Of a stretch of 64,000 bases of DNA, positions 48,802 to 62,131 are shown one piece after another. The stretch's first letter is position 1; each line of letters begins with the position of its first letter. The notes below the pieces were generated by a model. The model was not told the DNA's origin, did no database searches, and saw only the letters and a list, made by a program, of their open reading frames with translations. Location of the stretch: the NCBI RefSeq assembly GCF_000143415.4, contig NW_003314333.1:757207-821206 (forward strand), in the 5' to 3' direction. The DNA comes from Selaginella moellendorffii (taxonomy: Eukaryota > Plantae > Lycopodiophyta). The position numbers and the translations under genes were made by a program.

Positions 48802-49758
48802 CTAATGCTCCGAGCACGCAAACGTGTCTCCTCTTTGCAGGTTATCGAGAATCCCATTCAGGCTGTGCGCCTGGAAGGCGCAGTTCGAGCAAGTTGAGCT
48901 CCCATCGCTCACTGAACAAGCCGCGCAGTCCGACGCTCCCTGGTGCTGCACCAAGCAAACCGTGCCAACTTGCTGCTCCCACGACCCCGTGACCACGGTA
49001 TCCCACTCGTCACCGATCACGACCATGCTACGCTTCATCTCTGGAGAGAGCTGCAAGGACCTCGACCGCAGCGAGCCTCCAGCTCCCGGGCCGCTGAAAG
49101 CAACAACAGCAGCAGGTCCGCCGAGCGTTGCCGAGACGAGAACCGCGAGTCCGGCACCCAGGCTATGGCCAGTGAGCAGCAGCGATGCGTTTGGATACGC
49201 CTCCACAGCCTGGCGTGTGTAGCTCACACCTTGGGAGACGTAGTCGAGGCTCTGGTTGGAATAGGTGGAGAGGCAAGAGCTCAGGCTGGGAAGCGACACC
49301 CTTGGAAGCTCTCCAAACAGGATCCGATCGACGCACAGGTCTGCCTGGGTGGAGGTGCCCCGGAACGCAACCACAATGCGTTTGTGAGCGGAGGTGGTGT
49401 CTTCCTCGTACACTAGGCCCCGAGCTCCGGTGTTTGAGGAGGGCTCGAGTGTTGGGACTTTGGGGGATGGCTTCCAGCCGGGGACGGAGGCGGGCGTGGC
49501 CGAGAATCCATAGGCGTTGGAGGAGATTGTGACGAGCGGGGAGATGAAGAGTGCCAGGCGCTTGGGATCATACTGTGAGAGCTTGGAGACTTCGTCCCAC
49601 GCTTCTGGAGCTTCTTCGCTTGGTGGGATTTGTTTGGCTGAGCGGTGGTGGTGATGGCGGGCTAGAAGAACACTGGTAGTAACAATGGCGACCACAACCA
49701 AGAGCACGAGCAGGAGAGTGGTGCATTTGCAAACCATGGCTTTGGGATTTTTCTTCAT
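48802..49758 (-). CDS. Type II membrane-anchored class-3 lipase (alpha/beta hydrolase), Atg15-like
   Basis: N-terminal TM, IVVAFRGTS, nucleophile elbow LLTGHSLGAGLA, VAFSGPG, candidate catalytic D and H near the C-terminus; intronless. Confidence 0.8.
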   Translation of the reverse strand: MKKNPKAMVCKCTTLLLVLLVVVAIVTTSVLLARHHHHRSAKQIPPSEEAPEAWDEVSKLSQYDPKRLALFISPLVTISSNAYGFSATPASVPGWKPSPKVPTLEPSSNTGARGLVYEEDTTSAHKRIVVAFRGTSTQADLCVDRILFGELPRVSLPSLSSCLSTYSNQSLDYVSQGVSYTRQAVEAYPNASLLLTGHSLGAGLAVLVSATLGGPAAVVAFSGPGAGGSLRSRSLQLSPEMKRSMVVIGDEWDTVVTGSWEQQVGTVCLVQHQGASDCAACSVSDGSSTCSNCAFQAHSLNGILDNLQRGDTFACSEH

Positions 49759-50689: not shown

Positions 50690-51277
50690 TCAATAAGCCG
50701 GACTGTTGAAGCTGTCTTGTCGAGGCCCTCGGATCCTCCCATACAAGCTAAACGCTGGTGCCTGGTTTGTCTTCGGCAAGAAGTACGCTCCCGGTCCTGG
50801 AGAATGAGGTCGCTCTCACGAGAAATCTTACCCCGGATGCTGAAAGATGGAGAGCTCCCTTCACTCTCGACGTTGTAAGCCCCCTGTCCCGGACTCCGGC
50901 TAGTCTGCTGGACTGGAACCTTTCCCGGCCTAGTCTCGAGTGGAAAATCATTCCATTCGTTGTTCTTCTTCACCAGGCCATAGATCGTAAGCGATGGACT
51001 CGTCCGCTGTGCATAGGACCGTCCATGGAAGATCTCGATGTGTAGGAGCCGGGGCTGGGGGTGTCACGTCCTGATAACTCGAGAAGCTTTTCTGCATCGA
51101 GAAGGATGGAGAGGAGCTCATGCGCTGCGGACTGTATGATCCCGGGCCGGGAGAGTTTGGAGTTCTTGGCGAGCTTTGTCTCGACTGCATGGTGAAAGCC
51201 GGGCCTCTGGGAAGCCGCACAGAGTAAGTACCGGGGCCTGGAAAATCGCTTTCTCGTGGAGACGTCGCCTTGCCAGT
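50690..51277 (-). pseudogene. Detached 3' segment of the SHIPPO/ODF3-like gene, including the likely original C-terminus
   Basis: Matches 57320-57947 and continues SPGPGAYFLPKTNQAPAFSLYGRIRGPRQDSFNSPAY* (stop 50690); frameshifted. Confidence 0.8.
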
Positions 51278-51677
51278 CTCTTGGAAAATATTAAAACATT
51301 CAATAACTAGAAAATGTATTTTTACCTTGGCACTATCAGCCAGTGCTGGTAATGGATCACTTGCAGAAGTAGTAGTCCCAACCTTAATACAAATTAATTA
51401 GATTAAATAATTATCTTGAAAATTCTGCCAGAATTCGTCCAGCCCGAAAGTTGGTGCGGGTCCTTATCTCCAAAATCGATCAATTAATCAATGCAATAAT
51501 TTTATAAAGAGTTTTAGCAAAAGTTTCAACATGCAATTCTAAATTGAATTCTTCCTCTATAATTTTGCTCCCGGACAAAAGAGTTAAAGCCACGGAGGCT
51601 TGAAAGATATCTGTCTCTTTACTTGCACAGTGAGACTACGATCAATAAATTCTGGCTTCCAGCCCCATCGCAAGACC

Positions 51678-53831
51678 ATGGATCGCCTTGCGCTCGGCCT
51701 ATCTCTTCTCTTCTCGTCTCTCCTTGTAAGTAGTTCTTTCCAACTTCTATCGTTCAATCGTTACTAAAGCTGGGGATTCCTGTTTGGCAGCTTTCCGAAT
51801 GCAGTGACATAATCTCCACGAGTTTCGCCGATGAAGCCTCGCCTCTGGGGGCATTCGAATCGGCTCGCTTCGGCGAGCAGATGAGAAGAGGCGTTTTCAC
51901 GGCCGATGCAAAGCTTTGCCACCGTGCAGGATTTTTTTGTCATCCTTATGGAAGGCATGGAGGCAATGCCCACTTTGGCGATGCTGCAGAGAAGACCGCC
52001 CTTGCAGCAAGCAAGCTCGGAGGGAATGCTCACTTTGGTGACTTCCATGACCGTGTACGCTCGCTGGAAGCCAGAGATCTTGGCGGCAATGCACACTTTG
52101 GTGACTTCAAAGATCATGGAGCTCTGGGTGGAAACGCTCACTTTGGTGACTTTCATAAGGATCACGGGCTTGGCGGAAATGCTCACTTTGGTGACACTGG
52201 ATTGGGTGGAAACGCGCACTTTGGTGACTTCAAAGACCACGGATCATTGGGTGGAAATGCACACTTTGGCGACTTCAAAGACCATGACTTGGGTGGCAAT
52301 GCCCACTTTGGCGATTTCAAATCATTGGGTGGCAACGCCCATTTTGGCGATTTCAAAGACCATGGTTTGGGTGGCAACGCGCACTTTGGCGATTTCAAAG
52401 ATCATGGTTTCGGTGGTAATGCTCACTTTGGTGACTTCAAAGACCAAAGTTTGGGTGGAAATGGTCATTTCAGAGACTTTAAATACCATGGATCATTGGG
52501 TGGTAACGCCCACTTTGGCGACTTCAAAGACCATGGTTTGGGTGGCAACACGCACTTTGGCGATTTCAAAGATCATGGTTTGGATGGTAATGCTCCCTTT
52601 GGTGACTTCAAAGACCAAAGTTTGGGTGGAAATGGTCATTTCGGAGACTTTAAATACCATGGATCATTGGGTGGTAACGCCCACTTTGGCAACTTCAAAG
52701 ACCATGGTTTGGGTGGCAACGCGCACTTTGGCGATTTCAAAGATCATGGTTTGGGTGGTAATGCTCACTTTGGTGACTTCAAAGACCAAAGTTTGGGTGG
52801 CAATGCTCACTTTGGCGACTTTAAGGACCATGGCAATGGAGACTTCAAAGGTTTAGGTGGCAATGCTCACTTTGGGGACTTCAAAGACCATGGTTTAGGC
52901 GTAAATGCTCACTTTGGTGATGCTTCTCTAGGTGGAAATGCTCACTTTGGTGACCACGGATTAGGAGGAAATGCTCACTTTGGCGATGCTTCTGTCAAAC
53001 CAAGCACTAGTTGCAAGAAGAACATGCCGCTGTATTTGATCCAGATTTTTACTGAGTACGAGGAAGAGGGTTATGGAGGAAGGAAGTCACTGCACTCTAT
53101 GGACTGGGCAACCATCAAAGCCTTAATAGCGAAATGCTCCCCTGGAATGCTCCATCACTTCTTCACACTGGAAGAACTCCGACAAAGAAACGGTAAGTCC
53201 AAACATTCCTTTTGCAAACTTATCTTCTTACTCGTACTTGTGTAAAATCTTGACAGGAACTGAAAGTGTCCTCCCAAACATCCGTGACACTTATCCTCCA
53301 CGGGCACTCCTGCCAAGCGCAATGGCTAAGCACACAAACTTCGGTAAGCGGAGCCTTGACTCATACTTGAAAGAGTTTAACGTCCCAAAGGAGTCTCCAC
53401 TGGCAAGAAAAATGGCTTTCACTCTGGAACTCTGCAATGACAATGCTGGGGGGAAGATGAAGTGTGTGGCTTCCATGGAAGAAATGGCCGAGTTCGTCAC
53501 CTCCACCCTTGGCCCTGTGGAGATTACCATGGTGACAGGAAGCAAGGCTTTTGCAGCCGAGGTTGGAAAACCTATCAAGCTTGGCGAGGTCAAGCCCATC
53601 ACGAAAGGCGACACTCTTATGGTCGTCTGCCACACAACTATGTTTCCATACAAAGTTTACTTCTGTCACAAGGTGAGTAGCACCAGCGCTTCCAAAGTAA
53701 ATGTGAAGACCAGCAGTGGCATGGAGCTCACTCCAAACGTTCTGTGCCACAAGATGGGCAAGACTTATGTTTGTCACTGGTTTGTGGAAACGGTCATTAT
53801 GTTCGTTCCCACTGCCACTGTCTATGCTTGA
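51678..53831 (+). CDS. Secreted BURP-domain protein with 24 GGNAHFGD-type repeats; candidate fused burpitide (RiPP) precursor-cyclase of PG1beta ancestry. Exons 51678-51725, 51791-53192, 53257-53831
   Basis: Signal peptide MDRLALGLSLLFSSLL|LSECS; PG1beta-like ASPLGAFESARF...LCHRAGFFC; repeat array; BURP start HFFTLEEL...LPNIRDTYPPRALLP; TLELC...KCVASMEEMAEFVTSTLG; four CH motifs (VCH-x10-CH-x25-CH-x7-CHWF). Both introns are GT-AG and keep the frame. Confidence 0.92.
51959..52987 (+). repeat. Coding tandem array: 24 x 24-nt core with variable spacers and a 171-bp higher-order duplication (52445-52615 ~ 52616-52786)
   Basis: Core ggN-ggN-aaY-gcN-caY-ttY-ggN-gaY with synonymous variation; CAA-AGT units at 52445 and 52616 are 171 bp apart. 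Confidence 0.92.
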
Positions 53832-53846
53832 TTGTATCTAAAAAGC

Positions 53847-53945
53847 TAATAATGATGATGATGTTAATAATAATAATAATAATAAATTTACGCATTAAAA
53901 CATTTTTAATAATAATAATACTAATAATCCTAATCATAATACTTA
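53847..53945. repeat. (ATA/ATG)n low-complexity tract 3' of the BURP gene
   Basis: Directly visible. Confidence 0.75.
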
Positions 53946-54104
53946 TTGGTTTTGGGGTTAACAAAGAAATTATTTGAAATTATTTTTATTTTAAAATATT
54001 TTAAAATATTAAACAACTTCATTATTTTTAAACACATTTAAACTAAACATAGTTATGGTAGTCATAACGTACTTTGGACGCGCGGCTGCCACTTGGCCTC
54101 GTTG

Positions 54105-56347
54105 AGGATTCCATTACGTCCAAAGGAGAACTTTCCAGGACCAGGAACTGACGACGTTGTGTCGAGGCCGAGCTCGCCATCCTTCTCTCTCGGCACTCGC
54201 CGTTTTGTTCCGGAGGACAAAACAGAAAATCCAGGGCCAGGAGCGTACAGGATCATAGGGAAGCCACACGGCCCGCATTTTTCAATCACTGGCAAGCCCC
54301 GAGACTCGTCACCCCGCTCGAGAAGTCAATGTCCCGGAGCCTACAAGTACGAGAATGGAACCATCGGCTATGGTCTACCAGCTTTCACCATCACTGGCAA
54401 GGCGACGTCTCCACGAGAAAGCGATGTTCCAGGCCCCGGTACTTACTCTGTGCGGCTTCCCAGAGGCCCAGCTTTCACCATGTAGTCGAGACAAAGCTCA
54501 CCGAGAACTCCACACTCTCCCAGCCCGGGATCATACAGTCCGCAGCACAGGATGCGAGAAGAGTTATCAGGACGTGACACACCCGGCCCCGGCTCCTACA
54601 CCTCGAGATCTTCCATGGACGGTCCTTCCTTCAGCATGCACGGCCGACTTAGTAGCCCGGCTTCTTCCACTTCCAGGAGCAGCTCTCCGGGACCTGGAGT
54701 GTATACGATCTCTTCCAGGCCAACGAGTCCAAGCCAAAGTTCTTAGGAGGGAGTGGATTCTTTTGAGCTAGATAAAAATTCTTCCTCCACCATCACCATC
54801 ACTATAATTTTTCTTCCATGGTAGCAATAACAACTTTCTAGTGAGCTCTAGGAACTCTCACACTAGCATGGGAACAAGAGCGCCTCAACTAGAGTGTCAG
54901 TGATTAGCTATAAAAGCAAGCAGGATGGTGCTAGCGTCCAGTCCAAGAAGCTCGAGCCTCTAATCACAACCATGGCAGAGAAATCGACACAAAGAACGTT
55001 GCGCTAGACACTTCCAGTTTGGTTTCCACAAACTTTGGAAAGCTGGCTACTTTGTGTGTCAGTGTTGGGACTGGGGCTAGGATGGTACTCGCCGAAGTCC
55101 CAGCCATCTTCGCCAGCTTTCTCGATGGGAAGCTGGCTTGGCGATGGCAAGAGGTGTCACAGTCCTGGACCGGGAGCACACAACGTAAAGAGGAGGCCGG
55201 ACTGTCCAGCCTACACAATGTCTCCTCGGTTTAGAGACGCTGCAAAGGACCGGAGTCCCGGGCCAGGGCAGCACAATCTTCCTGGAACTTTTGGTGGTCC
55301 GGCTTATATCATGGCACGGCGGTTTAACTCGCCTCCCGGAGCTCACAGCGAAGCCATTTGCTTCTTTGTTTCCATCCTAGGCAAAGGTGCCGGCCCGAGG
55401 TGAGAGACAAACACTAGCTGGACCAAGACCGCAGTTGAAGGTTGGTTGAATGCTCATGCAAACGTTCCTGGTCACGGGGTTTATTCCAGCTACAGGCCCG
55501 AGCAGCTGCCGAAGAAGAACAAGGAGAAGTAAAAGGAAGTTGGCTACTTCATCGTCAAGGTGAATCCGAAAGGACCGGCTTACAAGATCACAAAGACGGG
55601 GACCTTCTTGATGCCGGAACCAGATGATCCGGCTTTCAATCCAGAGAGAGGGGAGTCAGGAAGAAGGGACTCTGGCAATGTAGGCAGGAGAGATTCCAGC
55701 TCCAGGAGAAGATCCAGTTTATCTCCAAGGCGGTCGTCGAGTCCTCCACAATCAGATCCAACTCCGGGACCAGGAAGATACCATGACACCGAGTTTCAAA
55801 CAAACGGTCCCTGGAGAACTATCAAGTCGAATTACGTCCAAAGGAGAACTTTCCAGGACCAGGGACTGACAACGTTGTGTTGAGGCTGAGCTCGCCACCC
55901 TTTTCTCTCGGAGGACAAAACAGAAAATCCAGGGCCAGGAGCGTGGCAAGGTGACGTCTCCACGACAAAGCGATGTTCCAGGCCCTGGTACTTACTCTCT
56001 GCGGCTTCCCAGAGGCCCGGCTTTCACCATGCAGTCGAGACAAAGCTCGCCAAGAACTCCAAACTCCCCCGGCCCGGGATCATACAGTTCGCAGTGCAGG
56101 AGCTCCTCTCCATCTTTCTCGATGCGAGAAAAGCTTCCTGAGTTATCAAGACGTGACACCCAGTTACACCTCGAGATCTTCCATGGACGGTCCTTCCTTC
56201 AGCATGCATGGCCGACTTAGCAGCCAAGCTTCTTCCACTTCCAGGAGCAGCTCTCCGGGACCTGGAGCATATACGATCTCTTCCAGGCCAACGAGTCCAT
56301 CATTTATGCTGTATGGCCCGGGAAGAAGAACAATGATTTTCCAGGGC
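54105..56347 (+). pseudogene. Three tandem, permuted, inverted pseudogene fragments of the SHIPPO/ODF3-like gene (about 54105-54745, 54746-55940, 55945-56347)
   Basis: Reverse-complement matches to about 57610-58237, 58100-59380 and 57555-57945; premature stops at 54483 and 55401, plus deletions. Confidence 0.85.
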
Positions 56348-57299: not shown

Positions 57300-59612
57300 T
57301 CATATTTTTCTTAGCAATCTTGGAGAACGAGGACGCTCCTCACAATAAATCTTCTCCTGGATGCTGAAAGATGGAGAGCTTCTTCCACTCTTGACGTTGT
57401 AAGCCCCCTGTCCTGGAGAACGAGGACGCTCCTCACGAGAAATCTTCCCCCGGATGCTGAAAGAGCTTCTTCGGCTTCTCTGCTGGACTGGAAGCTTTCC
57501 CCGGATGCTAAACTCCGGACTCACCCGGCCTAGTTTCGGGCAGTACGCTCCGGACCCTGGAAAATCATTCCATTCGTTGTTCTTCACCGGGCCATACATC
57601 GTAAATGATGGACTCGTTGGCCTGGAAGAGATAGTATACGCTCCAGGTCCCGGAGAGCTGCTCCTGGAAGTGGAAGAAGCCGGGCTACTAAGTCGGCCGT
57701 GCATGCTGAAGGAAGGACCGTCCATGGAAGATCTCGAGGTGTAGGAGCCGGGGCCGGGGGTGTCACGTCCTGATAACTCTTCTCGCATCCTGTGCTGCGG
57801 ACTGTATGATCCCGGGCTGGGAGAGTTTGGAGTTCTTGGTGAGCTTTGTCTCGACTGCATGGTGAAAGCCGGGCCTCTGGGAAGCCGCACAGAGTAAGTA
57901 CCGGGGCCTGGAACATCGCTTTCTCGTGGAGACGTCGCCTTGCCAGTGATGGTGAAAGCTGGTAGACCATAGCCGATGGTTCCATTCTCGTACTTGTAGG
58001 CTCCGGGACCGGGACTTCTCGAGCGGGGTGACGAGTCTCGGGGCTTGCCAGTGATTGAAAAATGCGGGCCGTGTGGCTTCCCTATGATCCTGTACGCTCC
58101 TGGCCCTGGATTTTCTGTTTTGTCCTCCGGAACAAAACGGCGAGTGCCGAGAGAGAAGGATGGCGAGCTCGGCCTCGACACAACGTCGTAAGTTCCTGGT
58201 CCTGGAAAGTTCTCCTTTGGACGTAATGGAATCCTGGACTTGATAGTTATCCAGGGACCGTTTGTTTGAAACTCGGCGTCCTGGTGTTCTCCCGGTCCCG
58301 GAGTTGGATCTGGTTGTGGAGGACCCGACGGCCGCCTCGGAGATAAACTGGATCTTCTCCTGGAGCTGGAACCTCTCCTGTCTAGATTGCCAGAGTCCCT
58401 TCTTCCTGACTCCCCTCTCTCTGGATTGAAAGCCGGATCATCCGGTTCCGGCATCAAGAAGGTCCCCGTCTTTGTGATCTTGTAAGCCGGTCCTTTCGGA
58501 TTCACCTTGACGATGAAGTAGCCAACTTCCTTTTTCTTCTCCTTCTTCTTCTTCGGCAGATGCTCGGGCCTGTAGCTGGAATAAACCCCGTGACCAGGAA
58601 CGTTTGCATGAGCATTCAACGAACCTTCAACCGCTGTCTTGGTCCAGCTAGTGTTTGTCTCTCGCATCGGGCCGGCACCTTTGCCTAGGACGGACAACAA
58701 AGAAGCAAATGGCTTCGGGCTGTGAGCTCTGGGAGGCGAGTTAAACCGCGGCGCCATGGTGTAAGCCGGACCACCAAAAGTTCCTGGAAGATTGTGCTGC
58801 CCCGGCCCGGGACTCCGGTCCTTTGCAGCGTCTCTAAACCGAGGAGACATCGTGTAGCCTGGACCGTCCGGCCTCCTCTTTACGTAGTGTGCTCCTGGTC
58901 CGGGATTGTGAGACCTCTTGCCATCGCCAAGCCGGCTTCCCATCGAGAAAGCTGGCGAAGATGGCTGGGACTTCGGCGAGTACCATCCCGGCCCCGGTCC
59001 CGGCGATGACGATCCTCCACGCAAAGTAGCCGGCTTTCCAAAGTTCGTGGAAACCAAACTGGATGTGTCTAGCGCGACGTTCTTGGAGCTGGAAGTTTGT
59101 GTCGATTTCTCTGCCATGGTTGTGATCGGGAGCTTTAGAGGCTCGAGCTTCTTGGACTGGACGCTGGCACCATCCTGCTTCTCAGAGATCCCACTGCTCC
59201 TATAGCTAATCACCGGTACTCTAGTTGACAAGCTCTTGTTCCCCATGCTAGTGTGAGAGTTCCTGGAGCTCACCAGAGAGTTGCTGCTGCTACCATGGAA
59301 GAAAAATGGTGGTGGAGGAGGAAGAACCTCTATCTCGTCAAGCTCGCAAAGCTTAGCTCGAAAGAATCCACTCCCTCCTAAAATCTCTGGCCTGGGGACG
59401 CTGTTGTGGAGGAGCCTGGGATGAAATACAGTGCTGCCTCGACAAGAAGGATCGCAAGCCTGTGAGAGATTGCCTGCTACTCGTCTCGGAGAGCTTGTGA
59501 TTCCAATTCCAGCACTGCTCCAAGCGGATCTGGGAGTGGTGCCGCCGCCGCCACCGCCGCCGTCCCAGTTCGTGTCGTGACCACTGCGCCAAAGAGCTGG
59601 CAGTTTGATCAT
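57300..59612 (-). CDS. Sperm-tail PG-rich repeat (SHIPPO/ODF3-like) protein, probably 3'-truncated
   Basis: About 14 P-G-P-G-x-Y/H...P-x-F/Y-S/T repeats with roughly 35-aa periodicity; intronless; the last residues (RLLRKI*) are read from unrelated AT-rich DNA. Confidence 0.82.
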   Translation of the reverse strand: MIKLPALWRSGHDTNWDGGGGGGGTTPRSAWSSAGIGITSSPRRVAGNLSQACDPSCRGSTVFHPRLLHNSVPRPEILGGSGFFRAKLCELDEIEVLPPPPPFFFHGSSSNSLVSSRNSHTSMGNKSLSTRVPVISYRSSGISEKQDGASVQSKKLEPLKLPITTMAEKSTQTSSSKNVALDTSSLVSTNFGKPATLRGGSSSPGPGPGWYSPKSQPSSPAFSMGSRLGDGKRSHNPGPGAHYVKRRPDGPGYTMSPRFRDAAKDRSPGPGQHNLPGTFGGPAYTMAPRFNSPPRAHSPKPFASLLSVLGKGAGPMRETNTSWTKTAVEGSLNAHANVPGHGVYSSYRPEHLPKKKKEKKKEVGYFIVKVNPKGPAYKITKTGTFLMPEPDDPAFNPERGESGRRDSGNLDRRGSSSRRRSSLSPRRPSGPPQPDPTPGPGEHQDAEFQTNGPWITIKSRIPLRPKENFPGPGTYDVVSRPSSPSFSLGTRRFVPEDKTENPGPGAYRIIGKPHGPHFSITGKPRDSSPRSRSPGPGAYKYENGTIGYGLPAFTITGKATSPRESDVPGPGTYSVRLPRGPAFTMQSRQSSPRTPNSPSPGSYSPQHRMREELSGRDTPGPGSYTSRSSMDGPSFSMHGRLSSPASSTSRSSSPGPGAYTISSRPTSPSFTMYGPVKNNEWNDFPGSGAYCPKLGRVSPEFSIRGKLPVQQRSRRSSFSIRGKISREERPRSPGQGAYNVKSGRSSPSFSIQEKIYCEERPRSPRLLRKI

Positions 59613-59874: not shown

Positions 59875-62131
59875 ATGCTGAAGAGAAAGGATTCGATGGC
59901 GAGGAACGAGGGCGAGAAGATGGAGATTATGCCTCTGGGAGCTGGAAGCGAGGTCGGCCGATCGTGCTGCCACATGACTTACAAGGGAAAGACGATTCTG
60001 GTGAGTGGATTTCGAGATTTCTTTCTTTCGAGCAAGGAAATGTGAAATGTGAGTGCTTACCTGCCCAGTTCGACTGTGGAATCCATCCCGGGTACACTGG
60101 AATGGCCGCGTTGCCGTATTTCGATGAGATTGATCCGTCGACAATCGACGTGCTGTTAGTAACTCAGTAAGGATTTTCCTTTTCGTTTCCTTTTATTGTT
60201 CTACTCTTCGTGATCTCTGTTCCAGCTTTCATCTCGATCACGCGGCCTCGCTTCCATATTTTCTGGAGAAGGTACTTGAGTTCTCTTTTGCGAGGCTGGT
60301 TTATAAAGTTTTGTCTCTCAGACCACATTCAAAGGCCGAGTGTTCATGACACACGCAACCAAAGCCATTTACAAGCTTTTGCTCACGGACTATGTCAAGA
60401 TCAGCAAAGGGTCTGTCGAAGACATGCTGTATGACGAGCAAGACGTGCTGAAAACCATGGACAAGATCGAGGTATGTGTGGTGCTACCTGAGATCACATC
60501 ACTTACGGTGCTTACAGGTTATAGACTTTCACCAAACTATGGAGGTGAATGGGATACGCTTCTGGTGCTACACCGCGGGACATGTCCTCGGGGCAGCGAT
60601 GTTCATGGTGGATATAGCCGGTATCCGGGTCTTATACACAGGAGACTACTCCAGAGAAGAGGATCGCCACCTCAAAGCCGCGGAAATGCCAGAGTTTTCT
60701 CCAGACGTCTGCATCATAGAGTCGACTTATGGCGTTCAGATTCATCAGCCGCGACACGTCCGGGAGAAGAGGTTTACGGAGACTATAGCACAAACCGTGT
60801 CTCACGGAGGCAGAGTTCTCATTCCGGCTTTCGCTCTAGGACGAGCACAGGAGCTTCTGTTGATTCTAGACGAGTACTGGGAGGCTCACCCGGAGCTGCA
60901 ACACATCCCGATCTACTATGCTTCACCGCTAGCCAAGAAGTGCATGGCGGTCTATCAGACTTACATCAATTCCATGAACGACAAGATCAAGTCTCAGTAC
61001 GAGAACTCGAATCCCTTCAACTTCAAGCATATCTCTCCTCTCAAGAGCATCGAGCAGTTCGAAGATGTCGGGCCTTCGATTGTTATGGCTAGTCCAAGCG
61101 GTTTGCAGAGCGGGCTCTCTCGTCAGCTATTCGACCGCTGGTGTCAGGACAGGAAGAACGCTTGCGTGATACCGGGTTACGTTGTGGAAGGGACACTTGC
61201 AAAGACTATACTCAACGAGCCGAAGGAAGTTGCCCTCGTCAGTGGCCTCGTAGTTCCGCTCAACATGAGGGTGGTGTACATCTCTTTTTCGGCACACGCG
61301 GACTTTGCTCAGACCAGCGCCTTCTTAGGGGAACTAAGGCCTCCGCACATTGTTCTCGTTCATGGAGAGCAGAACGAGATGGGCCGTCTAAAGGTCAAGT
61401 TACAGGCGCAGTTTGCAGAACAAAACGTCAAGATAAACTCGCCAAAGAACTGCCAACCCGTGGAGTTTTTTTTCAAAGGAGAGAAAGTTGCAAAGGCTGT
61501 TGGTAGGCTGGCGGAGAAAACACCAGACGAGGGGGGCGCAGTGAGCGGCCTGCTGATCAAGAAGAGCTTCACGTACCAGCTGATGGCTCCGGACGACCTT
61601 CATGTTTACACACAGCTTTCCAGGGGCAGCATCCAGCAGAGGCTCTCAGTCCCATACGACGGCGCATTTGTTGTGCTGCGACACAGGATTGAGCAGATGT
61701 ACGACGGCGTGGAACACGTTACAAAGGCCGAGAGCCAGACACTGAGGATCCATGACAAGGTGACGATTTCTCAGGAGTCAAACGAGCATGTGGTCCTCCA
61801 GTGGGTGTCCGATCCAGTGAGCGACATGATAGCGGATTCAATAATTGCGATCATCACGAAGATGGATCCTCGCTTGCTGACGGACGCCAATGGTCTGCCG
61901 AAGATTGAGGAGGATCTTACGGTTGTCCAGTCGCTGCTCACGTCTTTGTTTGGAGACGTCAAAGTAGACGAGGAAGGGAAGAAGCTCGTGATTTCTGTGG
62001 ACGGAGTTGCTGCCACTGTGGACTACACCAGCCGCAGCGTCGAGTGTGACGACGACAATCTCAAAGAACGCATCAAATCTGCTCTTCACAGAATGCATAA
62101 TGTTCTACACCCTCTGGCGATTGAAAGCTGA
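59875..62131 (+). CDS. CPSF73: Cleavage and polyadenylation specificity factor 73 kDa subunit (CPSF3)
   Basis: [61 protein letters not shown] (metallo-beta-lactamase/beta-CASP); short 5' introns and a large last exon. Confidence 0.96.

What the first reader, a model, noticed from the sequence alone, without database searches (positions are those of the whole stretch)
51678..53831. Candidate new burpitide (plant RiPP) system: secreted BURP cyclase fused to 24 His/Phe core repeats lacking Tyr and Trp
Seen: one spliced ORF comprising a signal peptide, 24 copies of GGNAHFGD (18 exact; variants GGNGHFRD, GGNTHFGD, DGNAPFGD, GGNGHFGD, GGNAHFGN, GVNAHFGD) and a C-terminal BURP domain with all four Cys-His motifs. 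Spacers vary from 3 to 13 aa (TGL, FKSL, FKDHGL, FHDRVRSLEARDL). The core keeps its amino acids despite synonymous codon changes, which implies selection on the peptide rather than on periodicity. Established: fused BURP domains are copper-dependent autocatalytic peptide cyclases (lyciumins, moroidin, Selaginella selanine) that crosslink Tyr/Trp side chains of repeated cores. Inference: this is a self-processing precursor whose core has only His and Phe as aromatics, so any product needs different chemistry (His or Phe crosslink, or Phe desaturation). The flanking Asn and Asp could be asparaginyl-endopeptidase sites releasing AHFGD or a longer LGGNAHFGD.
Basis: partly seen in the sequence, partly recalled or inferred. 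Interest (0 to 1): 0.95.

Follow-up and report, generated by a model that had tools for sequence, protein, structure and literature searches.

The report
Spikemoss BURP protein with His-Phe repeats
This is a real gene of the spikemoss Selaginella moellendorffii, whose gene family is transcribed, for a secreted protein that joins 24 near-identical histidine/phenylalanine repeats to a copper-enzyme (BURP) domain; it looks like a self-modifying peptide precursor but lacks the tyrosine or tryptophan that all known products of such enzymes need, so its chemistry is unknown and worth testing.

Summary
One three-exon gene (51678-53831, +) encodes 674 aa: a signal-like N-terminus, 24 GGNAHFGD cores (18 exact) and a C-terminal BURP domain (Pfam E 2.4e-30; AlphaFold pLDDT 91.7; best fold match the peanut BURP cyclase 8SY2/8SY3). 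Cores are under strong purifying selection (pN/pS 0.05 with saturated synonymous sites).

The genome is Selaginella moellendorffii. The gene is one of three about 98-99% identical paralogs, already annotated as 'PG non-catalytic subunit AroGP3-like' and probably catalogued as SmPG4/SmPG6. No paper found describes the repeats.

The modal unit is 14 aa, the PG1beta period, and its best register puts FKDH on the PG1beta FxxY motif. The unit is 90% self-identical against about 30% in PG1beta arrays. The weakly supported nearest relative is a S. uncinata putative lyciumin precursor.

The BURP domain keeps all four Cys-His pairs but lacks 18 residues between the third and fourth. The burpitide reading is only partly supported: no product is known, the defining Tyr/Trp is absent, and RD22-type BURP proteins also carry Tyr/Trp-free repeats. 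RNA evidence is at family level only.

Other first readers of this scan noted the PG1beta likeness, the short CH spacing and the tandem copies independently.

Verdict: new variant of a known kind, moderately interesting.

The parts
51678..51725 (+). Exon 1: start codon and first 16 residues (MDRLALGLSLLFSSLL) of the signal-like hydrophobic N-terminus.
   Evidence: model. (Kyte-Doolittle means 1.7-1.9 over residues 3-18). Identical N-terminus in RefSeq model P0001.
51726..51790 (+). Intron 1, 65 nt, GTAAGT...GGCAG.
   Evidence: Same position and ends in both paralogs of L001.
51836..51940 (+). N-terminal conserved segment ASPL...KLCHRAGFFC (C-x6-C). It carries two extra Cys-His dipeptides at aa 59 and 66.
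   Evidence: ASPL...C-x6-C in PG1beta-like and other BURP proteins. (CH..GFFC aligned with the S. uncinata precursor P0032)..
51959..52987 (+). Repeat array: 24 GGNAHFGD cores (18 exact), modal unit GGNAHFGDFKDHGL (14 aa). Composition 25% Gly, 13% Phe, 12% His, 12.5% Asp.
   Evidence: AlphaFold pLDDT 20-48 for the array in P0002, the same-family protein.
52988..53152 (+). Linker between the last repeat and the FF motif of the BURP domain.
53111..53828 (+). BURP domain (aa 457-674), interrupted by intron 2. FF motif at 53153-53179, C-x9-C at 53433-53465.
   Evidence: Pfam E 2.4e-30. (phmmer envelope). (pLDDT 91.7). (8SY2/8SY3, probability 1.00, TM about 0.5).
53193..53256 (+). Intron 2, 64 nt, GTAAGT...GACAG, phase 1.
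53628..53804 (+). Metal-site region CH-x10-CH-x25-CH-x7-CH-x8-F. CH dipeptides lie at 53628, 53664, 53745 and 53772. There is an 18-residue deletion between CH3 and CH4, and the terminal W is replaced by F.
   Evidence: In the model CH3 and CH4 lie on adjacent strands of a tight hairpin.
51272..51397 (-). Remnant of an aromatic-amino-acid-decarboxylase-like exon (43 aa, 79% identical to the AADC-like gene next to paralog g1). It marks the upstream edge of the duplicated BURP block.

Best explanation
This is a lineage-restricted, secreted pre-pro-protein of Selaginella moellendorffii, one of three near-identical paralogs. Its payload is the His/Phe repeat array, and its C-terminal BURP domain most likely acts on that array in cis.

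Shown:
- The intact three-exon gene.
- The 24 strongly constrained cores.
- A confidently folded BURP domain that keeps all four Cys-His pairs, the FF motif and the two extra Cys.
- Purifying selection on the non-repeat parts of all three copies.
- Transcripts of the gene family.

Inferred:
- Like fused burpitide cyclases, and like PG1beta, whose FxxY phenylalanines carry a -2 Da modification, the copper domain oxidises a C-H bond of the repeat.
- With no Tyr or Trp available, the likeliest outcome is a -2 Da change at Phe. That would be either an alpha,beta-dehydro-Phe or a bond from Phe C-beta to the imidazole N of the His three residues on. F-K-D-H sits where PG1beta has F-x-x-Y.
- The D-F-K-D element resembles the 'Phe flanked by charges' recognition determinant of burpitide precursors.

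Whether the modified array stays a polymeric cell-wall or vacuolar protein after the BURP domain is cut off (as in tomato PG1beta) or is cut into small peptides is open. I think the polymeric fate somewhat more likely.
For: - Gene model and repeats.
- Selection on the cores: pN/pS 0.05 with pS 0.69.
- Unit identity 0.90 against 0.29-0.36 in PG1beta arrays.
- BURP Pfam hit. AlphaFold pLDDT 91.7 with CH3 and CH4 on adjacent hairpin strands. Foldseek top hits 8SY2/8SY3.
- Nearly invariant C/H columns all present.
- Paralogs: non-repeat pS about 0.05, pN/pS about 0.1.
- Best BURP-domain hits include PG1beta-like proteins.
- Modal 14-aa period, and a register test that places FKDH on FxxY, G on G and N on N, p 0.023.
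- Sister to the S. uncinata putative lyciumin precursor, with a shared CH..GFFC segment.
- RNA runs from several studies hold about half of the 31-mers.
- Literature: -2 Da on the Phe of FxxY in PG1beta (PMC5313189). BURP cleaved from mature tomato PG1beta (PMC4460304). The four His are essential in cyclases, and a Phe(-7) flanked by charges acts as recognition determinant (PMC12186524).
Against: - No biochemical datum exists for this protein.
- All characterised BURP crosslinks use Tyr or Trp (PMC11253845).
- The enzyme that makes the PG1beta -2 Da modification has not been identified, so the analogy rests on an unproven link.
- The 18-residue deletion removes a segment conserved in nearly all BURP domains (consensus DTSxWxPxHxAFxxLxxxPG) and could disable the HH-B copper site.
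- The register match to PG1beta is only p about 0.02 for a 14-residue unit.
- Tree placement is unresolved: 56/65 support for the S. uncinata sister grouping, and the AU test gives p 0.40 for the PG1beta alternative.
- RNA evidence cannot separate the three paralogs.
Confidence: 0.4

Rival explanations
1. The array is a histidine-rich metal-binding protein with no chemistry on the repeats. The 24 units (40 His and 43 Asp in 343 residues; Gly-Gly-Asn-Ala-His followed by Phe-Gly-Asp) form a multi-site Cu(II), Zn or Ni binding array. This would be comparable in principle to the His/Gly/aromatic octarepeats of prion protein. The BURP domain would serve targeting, folding or metal handling rather than modifying the array. 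The function would be metal buffering or storage in the wall or vacuole.
For: - Composition of the array.
- Extra CH dipeptides just before the first repeat.
- The strict conservation of His, Gly and Asp positions fits a coordination motif.
- A USP-type BURP protein (SALI3-2) is reported to bind Cu and Cd (abstract of PMC4047006).
- The array is predicted disordered.
- The prion analogy is from my own knowledge, not tested here.
Against: - Phe is as strictly conserved as His (22 TTT and 2 TTC codons, no replacement). A pure metal site would not require that.
- The fused-BURP, multi-copy-core design is elsewhere tied to cis modification.
- The two functions are not exclusive.
Confidence: 0.25
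2. The protein is a self-processing burpitide precursor whose repeats are cyclised by new His- or Phe-based chemistry and then excised, for example at the flanking Asn/Asp, as small peptides such as (L)GGNAHFGD. That would be a new burpitide class.
For: - The same architecture and selection data as above.
- Selaginella makes proven burpitides from fused precursors: SkrBURP and selanine (PMC11253845).
- The nearest relative is annotated as a lyciumin precursor.
- His already takes part in one burpitide bond, Trp-C2 to His-N1 in moroidin (PMC12056006).
Against: - There is no Tyr or Trp, no N-terminal Gln for pyroglutamate, no known peptide of this sequence, and no evidence for cleavage sites.
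- The moroidin His bond needs Trp.
- The 'spacer' is conserved too, and the unit has the PG1beta period. That fits a polymeric product better.
- The HH-B loop deletion.
Confidence: 0.15
3. The BURP domain is catalytically dead because of the CH3-CH4 deletion and the W-to-F change. In that case the protein is simply a species-specific repetitive cell-wall or storage protein. The domain would be kept only for secretion, sorting or folding, as was proposed for BURP proteins before the cyclase discovery.
For: - The deletion of a nearly universal 18-residue segment.
- The long branch of the trio, 1.2-1.3 substitutions per site.
- The family is found in only one species.
Against: - All four His and all six Cys are retained.
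- pN/pS is about 0.1 in the non-repeat parts since duplication.
- The fold is predicted at pLDDT above 90 through the shortened hairpin.
- An unrelated BURP protein (P0063) has independently acquired the same CH-x7-CH spacing, which suggests the loop is dispensable.
Confidence: 0.15

Closest known systems
Selaginella uncinata 'putative lyciumin precursor peptide' (QFZ95611.1; P0032)
   Same: - Same genus.
- Signal peptide, then an N-terminal segment with CH..GFFC, a multi-copy repeat array and a C-terminal BURP domain.
- Sister to the window's protein in the best tree.
   Different: - Its five exact QPYSVFAW cores carry Tyr and Trp.
- Its CH spacing is canonical, with x25 between CH3 and CH4.
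- BURP identity is only about 30%, and the sister grouping has weak support (56/65).
PG1beta / AroGP polygalacturonase non-catalytic subunit family (tomato PG1beta, AtPGL1-3, OsBURP16; P0004, P0008 here)
   Same: - Overall length and order of modules.
- ASPL...C-x6-C N-terminal segment.
- About 20 repeats with a 14-aa period.
- An aromatic at i and i+3, Gly at position 5 and Asn at position 9 in the best register.
- Among the best BURP-domain hits.
- NCBI and PMC9121072 file the family here.
- PG1beta repeats carry -2 Da on Phe (PMC5313189).
   Different: - No FxxY motif: one chance occurrence against about 21.
- Repeats are 90% self-identical against about 30%.
- The protein lies outside the PG1beta clade in the tree (99/93), although the AU test does not reject inclusion.
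- The CH3-CH4 segment is deleted.
Proven fused burpitide cyclases: SkrBURP (S. kraussiana, selanine), AhyBURP (peanut, legumenin; PDB 8SY2/8SY3), LbaLycA
   Same: - Cores and the copper BURP domain sit in one polypeptide.
- The four CH histidines are present.
- The fold matches AhyBURP.
- The genus is known to make burpitides.
   Different: - Their cores contain the Tyr or Trp that forms the macrocycle. Here there is none.
- Sequence identity to AhyBURP is about 20%.
- The HH-B loop is shortened.
RD22-type BURP proteins (TxV / GVGKG repeats; e.g. P0050)
   Same: A BURP domain fused to a Tyr/Trp-free, Gly-rich repeat array with no known peptide product.
   Different: - The repeat is unrelated, without His or Phe.
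- They lie in the other main branch of the BURP tree built here.

Membership tests
BURP domain family (PF03181) | Match to the Pfam BURP profile above the gathering score | tested here: met
   106.2 bits against a cut-off of 27, E 2.4e-30, on exon 3 alone.
BURP domain family (PF03181) | FF motif, two conserved Cys and four Cys-His dipeptides | tested here: met
   every nearly invariant C/H column of a 98-sequence alignment is present, and HHFF lies at aa 471-474.
BURP domain family (PF03181) | Canonical spacing CH-x10-CH-x23-27-CH-x23-26-CH-x8-W | tested here: not met
   the spacing is x10, x25, x7, then x8-F. There is an 18-residue deletion relative to P0032. Among 151 fetched proteins only one unrelated protein (P0063) shares x7.
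BURP domain family (PF03181) | BURP fold | tested here: met
   pLDDT 91.7. The only significant PDB matches are 8SY2/8SY3 (probability 1.00, TM 0.46-0.53, rmsd 2.7-3.9 A).
Fused burpitide precursor / cyclase | Repeated core peptides N-terminal to a BURP domain in one ORF | tested here: met
Fused burpitide precursor / cyclase | Core contains the Tyr or Trp whose side chain forms the macrocyclic bond (definition in PMC11253845) | tested here: not met
   no Tyr or Trp in any of the 24 cores, and only two Tyr in spacers.
Fused burpitide precursor / cyclase | Four invariant copper-binding His (HH-A and HH-B pairs) | tested here: met
   by sequence. The geometry of HH-B was inferred only from the strand pairing in the model. 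No coordinates were available to measure.
Fused burpitide precursor / cyclase | Cu- and O2-dependent macrocyclisation and a detectable peptide product | not testable with these tools
   Needs expression, reconstitution and mass spectrometry.
PG1beta-like BURP subfamily | Many copies of a 14-aa repeat | tested here: met
   11 of 23 core-to-core spacings are exactly 14 aa and 5 are 15. The TRF period is 42 nt.
PG1beta-like BURP subfamily | FxxY tetrapeptide in each repeat | tested here: not met
   one FxxY upstream of the BURP domain against 21-22 in P0004, P0008 and P0012. The equivalent position reads FKDH (best register, p 0.023) or FGDF (second best).
PG1beta-like BURP subfamily | Placement inside the PG1beta-like clade of the BURP tree | tested here: inconclusive
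   the clade excludes the trio at 99/93; the AU test does not reject inclusion (p 0.396).
PG1beta-like BURP subfamily | -2 Da modified Phe, removal of the BURP domain, and association with pectin or PG2 | not testable with these tools
   Known for tomato, alfalfa, Arabidopsis and maize proteins only (PMC5313189, PMC4460304).

The most novel reading that the evidence does not exclude
The shortened BURP domain catalyses, on its own 24 repeats, a crosslink or desaturation that needs neither Tyr nor Trp. Candidates are a Phe C-beta to His imidazole-N bond within F-K-D-H, or dehydro-Phe. That would define a new burpitide or BURP-modified-protein class. It would also identify BURP as the long-sought enzyme behind the -2 Da phenylalanines of PG1beta cell-wall proteins.
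Probability: 0.15. Interest if true: 0.85.

Novelty: new variant of a known kind. Interest (0 to 1): 0.55.

Why it matters
BURP copper cyclases are a recently discovered enzyme class, and every known product hinges on Tyr or Trp. A fused BURP protein has 24 cores under strong purifying selection that contain only His and Phe as ring-bearing residues, and it occurs in a genus proven to make burpitides. It is therefore a clean natural test of how far the chemistry reaches.

Its 14-aa period puts F-K-D-H where PG1beta has F-x-x-Y. That links it to the unexplained -2 Da phenylalanines of PG1beta, a cell-wall protein family found across land plants whose modifying enzyme is unknown.

The natural 18-residue deletion at the HH-B copper site also shows which part of the BURP active-site region may be dispensable. 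If nothing happens to the repeats, the protein is instead an unusual His-rich metal-binding array, which is of narrower interest.

Tried and rejected
They lie in the AT-rich 3' flank, outside the gene.

2. Word-indexed protein searches found nothing beyond the two S. moellendorffii clusters. The queries were the repeat-bearing exon, the BURP domain within the full-length range and exon 3 for short fragments. No orthologue in another species could be shown. Length windows and word sharing limit this.

3. P0002 has no gene on record in the contig index.

4. The ESM Atlas feature search of the repeat part gave only weak leads, about 0.6, to other BURP proteins.

5. AlphaFold of the full-length P0002 gave no confident fold for the array, pLDDT 20-48. 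It therefore does not discriminate a solenoid from disorder.

6. Literature searches for the core sequence, for SELMODRAFT_229071 and for S. uncinata lyciumin returned nothing. The AhyBURP structure paper itself is not in the library, so the role of the deleted loop could not be read.

7. I considered an RTX-like calcium repeat (GGxGxD) and rejected it on period and motif. This is my own knowledge, not tested.

8. I considered the open alternative frames and the antisense ORFs across the repeats and rejected them. Codon changes fall on third positions of the annotated frame, roughly 63 synonymous against 8 replacement departures from the modal codons by my count from the codon table.
Full report
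**1. What is there**

Reading 51000-54600 and assembling the exons gives one gene on the + strand.
- Exon 1 is 51678-51725, exon 2 is 51791-53192 and exon 3 is 53257-53831.
- Both introns start GTAAGT and end AG. They are 65 and 64 nt.
- The CDS is 2025 nt and encodes 674 aa.

The same splice pattern applied to a paralog in the public S. moellendorffii assembly reproduces the RefSeq protein P0001 residue for residue. The model is therefore the accepted one for this family.

The N-terminus, MDRLALGLSLLFSSLLLSEC, is hydrophobic in the way of a signal peptide. SignalP was not available.

**2. The repeats**

- A pattern scan finds 24 cores, 18 of them exactly GGNAHFGD.
- Tandem Repeats Finder reports a 42-nt period and a 171-nt higher-order unit.
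- The modal unit is 14 aa, GGNAHFGDFKDHGL. Eleven of the 23 core-to-core spacings are exactly 14.
- The claim of selection on the peptide holds quantitatively. Among the 24 cores the mean pairwise synonymous difference is 0.69 per site, essentially saturated. The non-synonymous difference is 0.038, a ratio of 0.05.
- The six-residue spacer is also constrained, at 0.28.
- Cores have no Tyr or Trp, but two spacers read FKYHGSL.
- The array is 25% Gly, 13% Phe, 12% His and 12.5% Asp.

**3. The BURP domain**

- Exon 3 alone matches Pfam BURP at E 2.4e-30.
- A 98-sequence alignment shows that every nearly invariant Cys and His of the family is present. The FF motif lies in exon 2.
- An AlphaFold model with that alignment has mean pLDDT 91.7.
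- Its only significant PDB matches are the peanut burpitide cyclase AhyBURP, 8SY2/8SY3: probability 1.00, TM about 0.5.

The domain is not canonical.
- The spacing is CH-x10-CH-x25-CH-x7-CH-x8-F. The alignment with a Selaginella uncinata relative shows a clean 18-residue deletion between the third and fourth CH.
- In characterised cyclases these two histidines form the HH-B copper site, and all four His are essential (PMC12186524, PMC12164859).
- In the model the two CH dipeptides sit on adjacent strands of a tight hairpin (E188-194 and E197-202). From strand pairing I infer that this geometry could keep the disulfide-stapled bis-His site. I could not measure distances.
- An unrelated BURP protein (P0063) has the same x7 spacing. 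This suggests the loop can be lost repeatedly.

**4. Organism, copies, expression**

- The only close proteins among 5.8 billion are two S. moellendorffii clusters. P0001 is named 'polygalacturonase non-catalytic subunit AroGP3-like'. P0002 is SELMODRAFT_229071.
- The P0001 locus, on scaffold GL377630.1, holds two tandem copies (642 and 641 aa). Each lies next to a Pyridoxal_deC (AADC-like) gene on the opposite strand.
- The window's copy is a third paralog. DNA is 88-94% identical over 51273-54104, with different flanks.
- The copies carry 24, 22 and 21 cores.
- Outside the repeats they differ at pS about 0.05 and pN about 0.005, a ratio of about 0.1. All three are therefore kept under constraint.
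- Contigs of at least 14 runs typed as probable RNA, from several studies, hold about half of the 31-mers of 51500-54000.
- The paralogs are about 98% alike in their unique coding parts, so this shows transcription of the family, not of this copy.
I sent nothing from those places to any search tool afterwards.
- Supplementary Table 1 of PMC9121072 lists S. moellendorffii BURP proteins SmPG4 (597 aa) and SmPG6 (641 aa). Its motif table shows them with a private motif and lacking one motif that the Arabidopsis and rice PG1beta-like proteins have near the C-terminus. By length and motif pattern these are probably this family. It is catalogued but not analysed.
- No paper holds the core sequence.

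**5. Relatives**

An exhaustive HMMER search of 1.84 billion representatives found only the protein's own cluster above 50% identity. The next hit is E 2e-19. Among the best hits are PG1beta-like proteins:
- Acorus 'polygalacturonase-1 non-catalytic subunit beta', P0008.
- P0004, with 22 FxxY.
- Welwitschia P0005.

In a careful tree the three S. moellendorffii proteins sit on a long branch.
- They lie outside the PG1beta-like clade, which excludes them at 99/93.
- They are sister to P0032, the S. uncinata 'putative lyciumin precursor' (QFZ95611.1), at only 56/65.
- An AU test does not reject joining them to the PG1beta clade, p 0.396.
- P0032 and the window's protein alone share the N-terminal CH(R/S)xGFFC segment.
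- P0032 carries five exact QPYSVFAW cores and canonical CH spacing.

**6. PG1beta or precursor?**

PG1beta-like proteins are defined by about 20 copies of a 14-aa unit, FTNYGxxGNGGxxx (PMC6102523).

A profile of 94 such units was compared with this unit in all 14 cyclic registers.
- The best register is FKDHGLGGNAHFGD on FxSYGxxxNVxxxx. FKDH then stands for FxxY, with Gly5 and Asn9 matching. The p value is 0.023 against column permutations.
- FGDF on FxxY is second best.

The period and the skeleton are thus PG1beta-like, with Tyr replaced by His or by Phe. The array behaves differently, though. Units are 90% identical to each other, against 29-36% in six PG1beta-like proteins. That is the pattern of multi-core peptide precursors, or of strict binding motifs.

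Among 26 long-N-terminus BURP relatives, only this family and an RD22-type protein lack Tyr and Trp. Tyr/Trp-free repeats on BURP proteins are therefore not unprecedented.

AlphaFold gives the array no confident fold.

**7. Mechanism**

Burpitides are defined by BURP-made macrocyclic bonds from Tyr or Trp (PMC11253845). That feature is absent here.

The nearest published chemistry that needs no Tyr or Trp nucleophile is the quantitative -2 Da on the Phe of FxxY in PG1beta. It was read as alpha,beta-dehydro-Phe and its enzyme is unknown (PMC5313189). In tomato the mature PG1beta is the repeat domain alone, with the BURP domain cut off (PMC4460304).

I therefore think it most likely (0.4) that the copper domain abstracts a hydrogen from the repeat, probably at Phe C-beta. 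That would leave a -2 Da product, either dehydro-Phe or a Phe-His link. D-F-K-D may serve as the 'Phe flanked by charges' recognition element described for split precursors (PMC12186524).

Rivals:
- A His-rich metal-binding array without covalent chemistry (0.25).
- An inactive domain on a structural repeat protein (0.15).

None can be settled without mass spectrometry.

**8. Verdict**

- The protein is a Selaginella-lineage BURP-repeat protein with precursor-like features and a PG1beta-like repeat skeleton.
- Membership in the burpitide class fails on the defining residue.
- Membership in the PG1beta subfamily fails on FxxY and is phylogenetically unresolved.
- The gene is already annotated, but its repeat and its shortened active-site region are undescribed in the searchable literature.
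- It is a new variant of a known kind and a good, cheap experimental target. I score it 0.55 rather than 0.95.

Noticed in passing
window 51015-51284 and 54393-54626 (also 55935-56125, 57587-58000): The 2.8-kb BURP block (51273-54104, the part homologous to the tandem paralogs) lies between inverted copies, 93-95% complementary, of sperm-tail PG-rich (SHIPPO, PF07004) repeat sequence. A 770-aa SHIPPO-repeat ORF lies at 57300-59612 (-). The BURP copy seems to have landed inside, or rearranged with, a SHIPPO-repeat gene.
   Followed up: partly
window 51272-51397 (-); L001:7704-9763 and L001:13227-14504: Both tandem paralogs in the public assembly are paired head-to-head with a Pyridoxal_deC (AADC-like) gene, one full (488 aa) and one fragment (219 aa). 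The window copy keeps only a 43-aa exon remnant (79% identical) just upstream of its promoter region. Whether the BURP/AADC pairing is functional or an accident of duplication is open.
   Followed up: partly
window 52198-52833: There is a higher-order repeat of 171 nt (four units, 57 aa) in 3.8 copies at 88% identity. Core numbers differ between paralogs (24, 22, 21). The older model P0002 has fewer repeats still. The array changes length by unequal exchange, and older assemblies may have collapsed it.
   Followed up: partly
window 51917-51943: Two additional Cys-His dipeptides (LCHRAGFFCHPYGRH) lie in the N-terminal segment just before the first repeat. The S. uncinata relative has only the first. 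They may form an extra metal or disulfide site.
   Followed up: no
protein P0063 (210 aa, transcriptome contig of unknown plant): A BURP domain from the other main branch of the family has independently the same CH-x7-CH spacing (CHTSEKADVCH). P0049, P0088, P0110 and P0075 have intermediate spacings of 10-17.
   Followed up: partly
   Followed up: no
window 48802-49758 (-), 60476-62131 (+): The neighbouring ORFs match class-3 lipase (PF01764) and a CPSF73-type pre-mRNA 3'-end endonuclease (Beta-Casp, RMMBL, CPSF73-100_C). They are ordinary housekeeping neighbours with no obvious link to the BURP gene.
   Followed up: no
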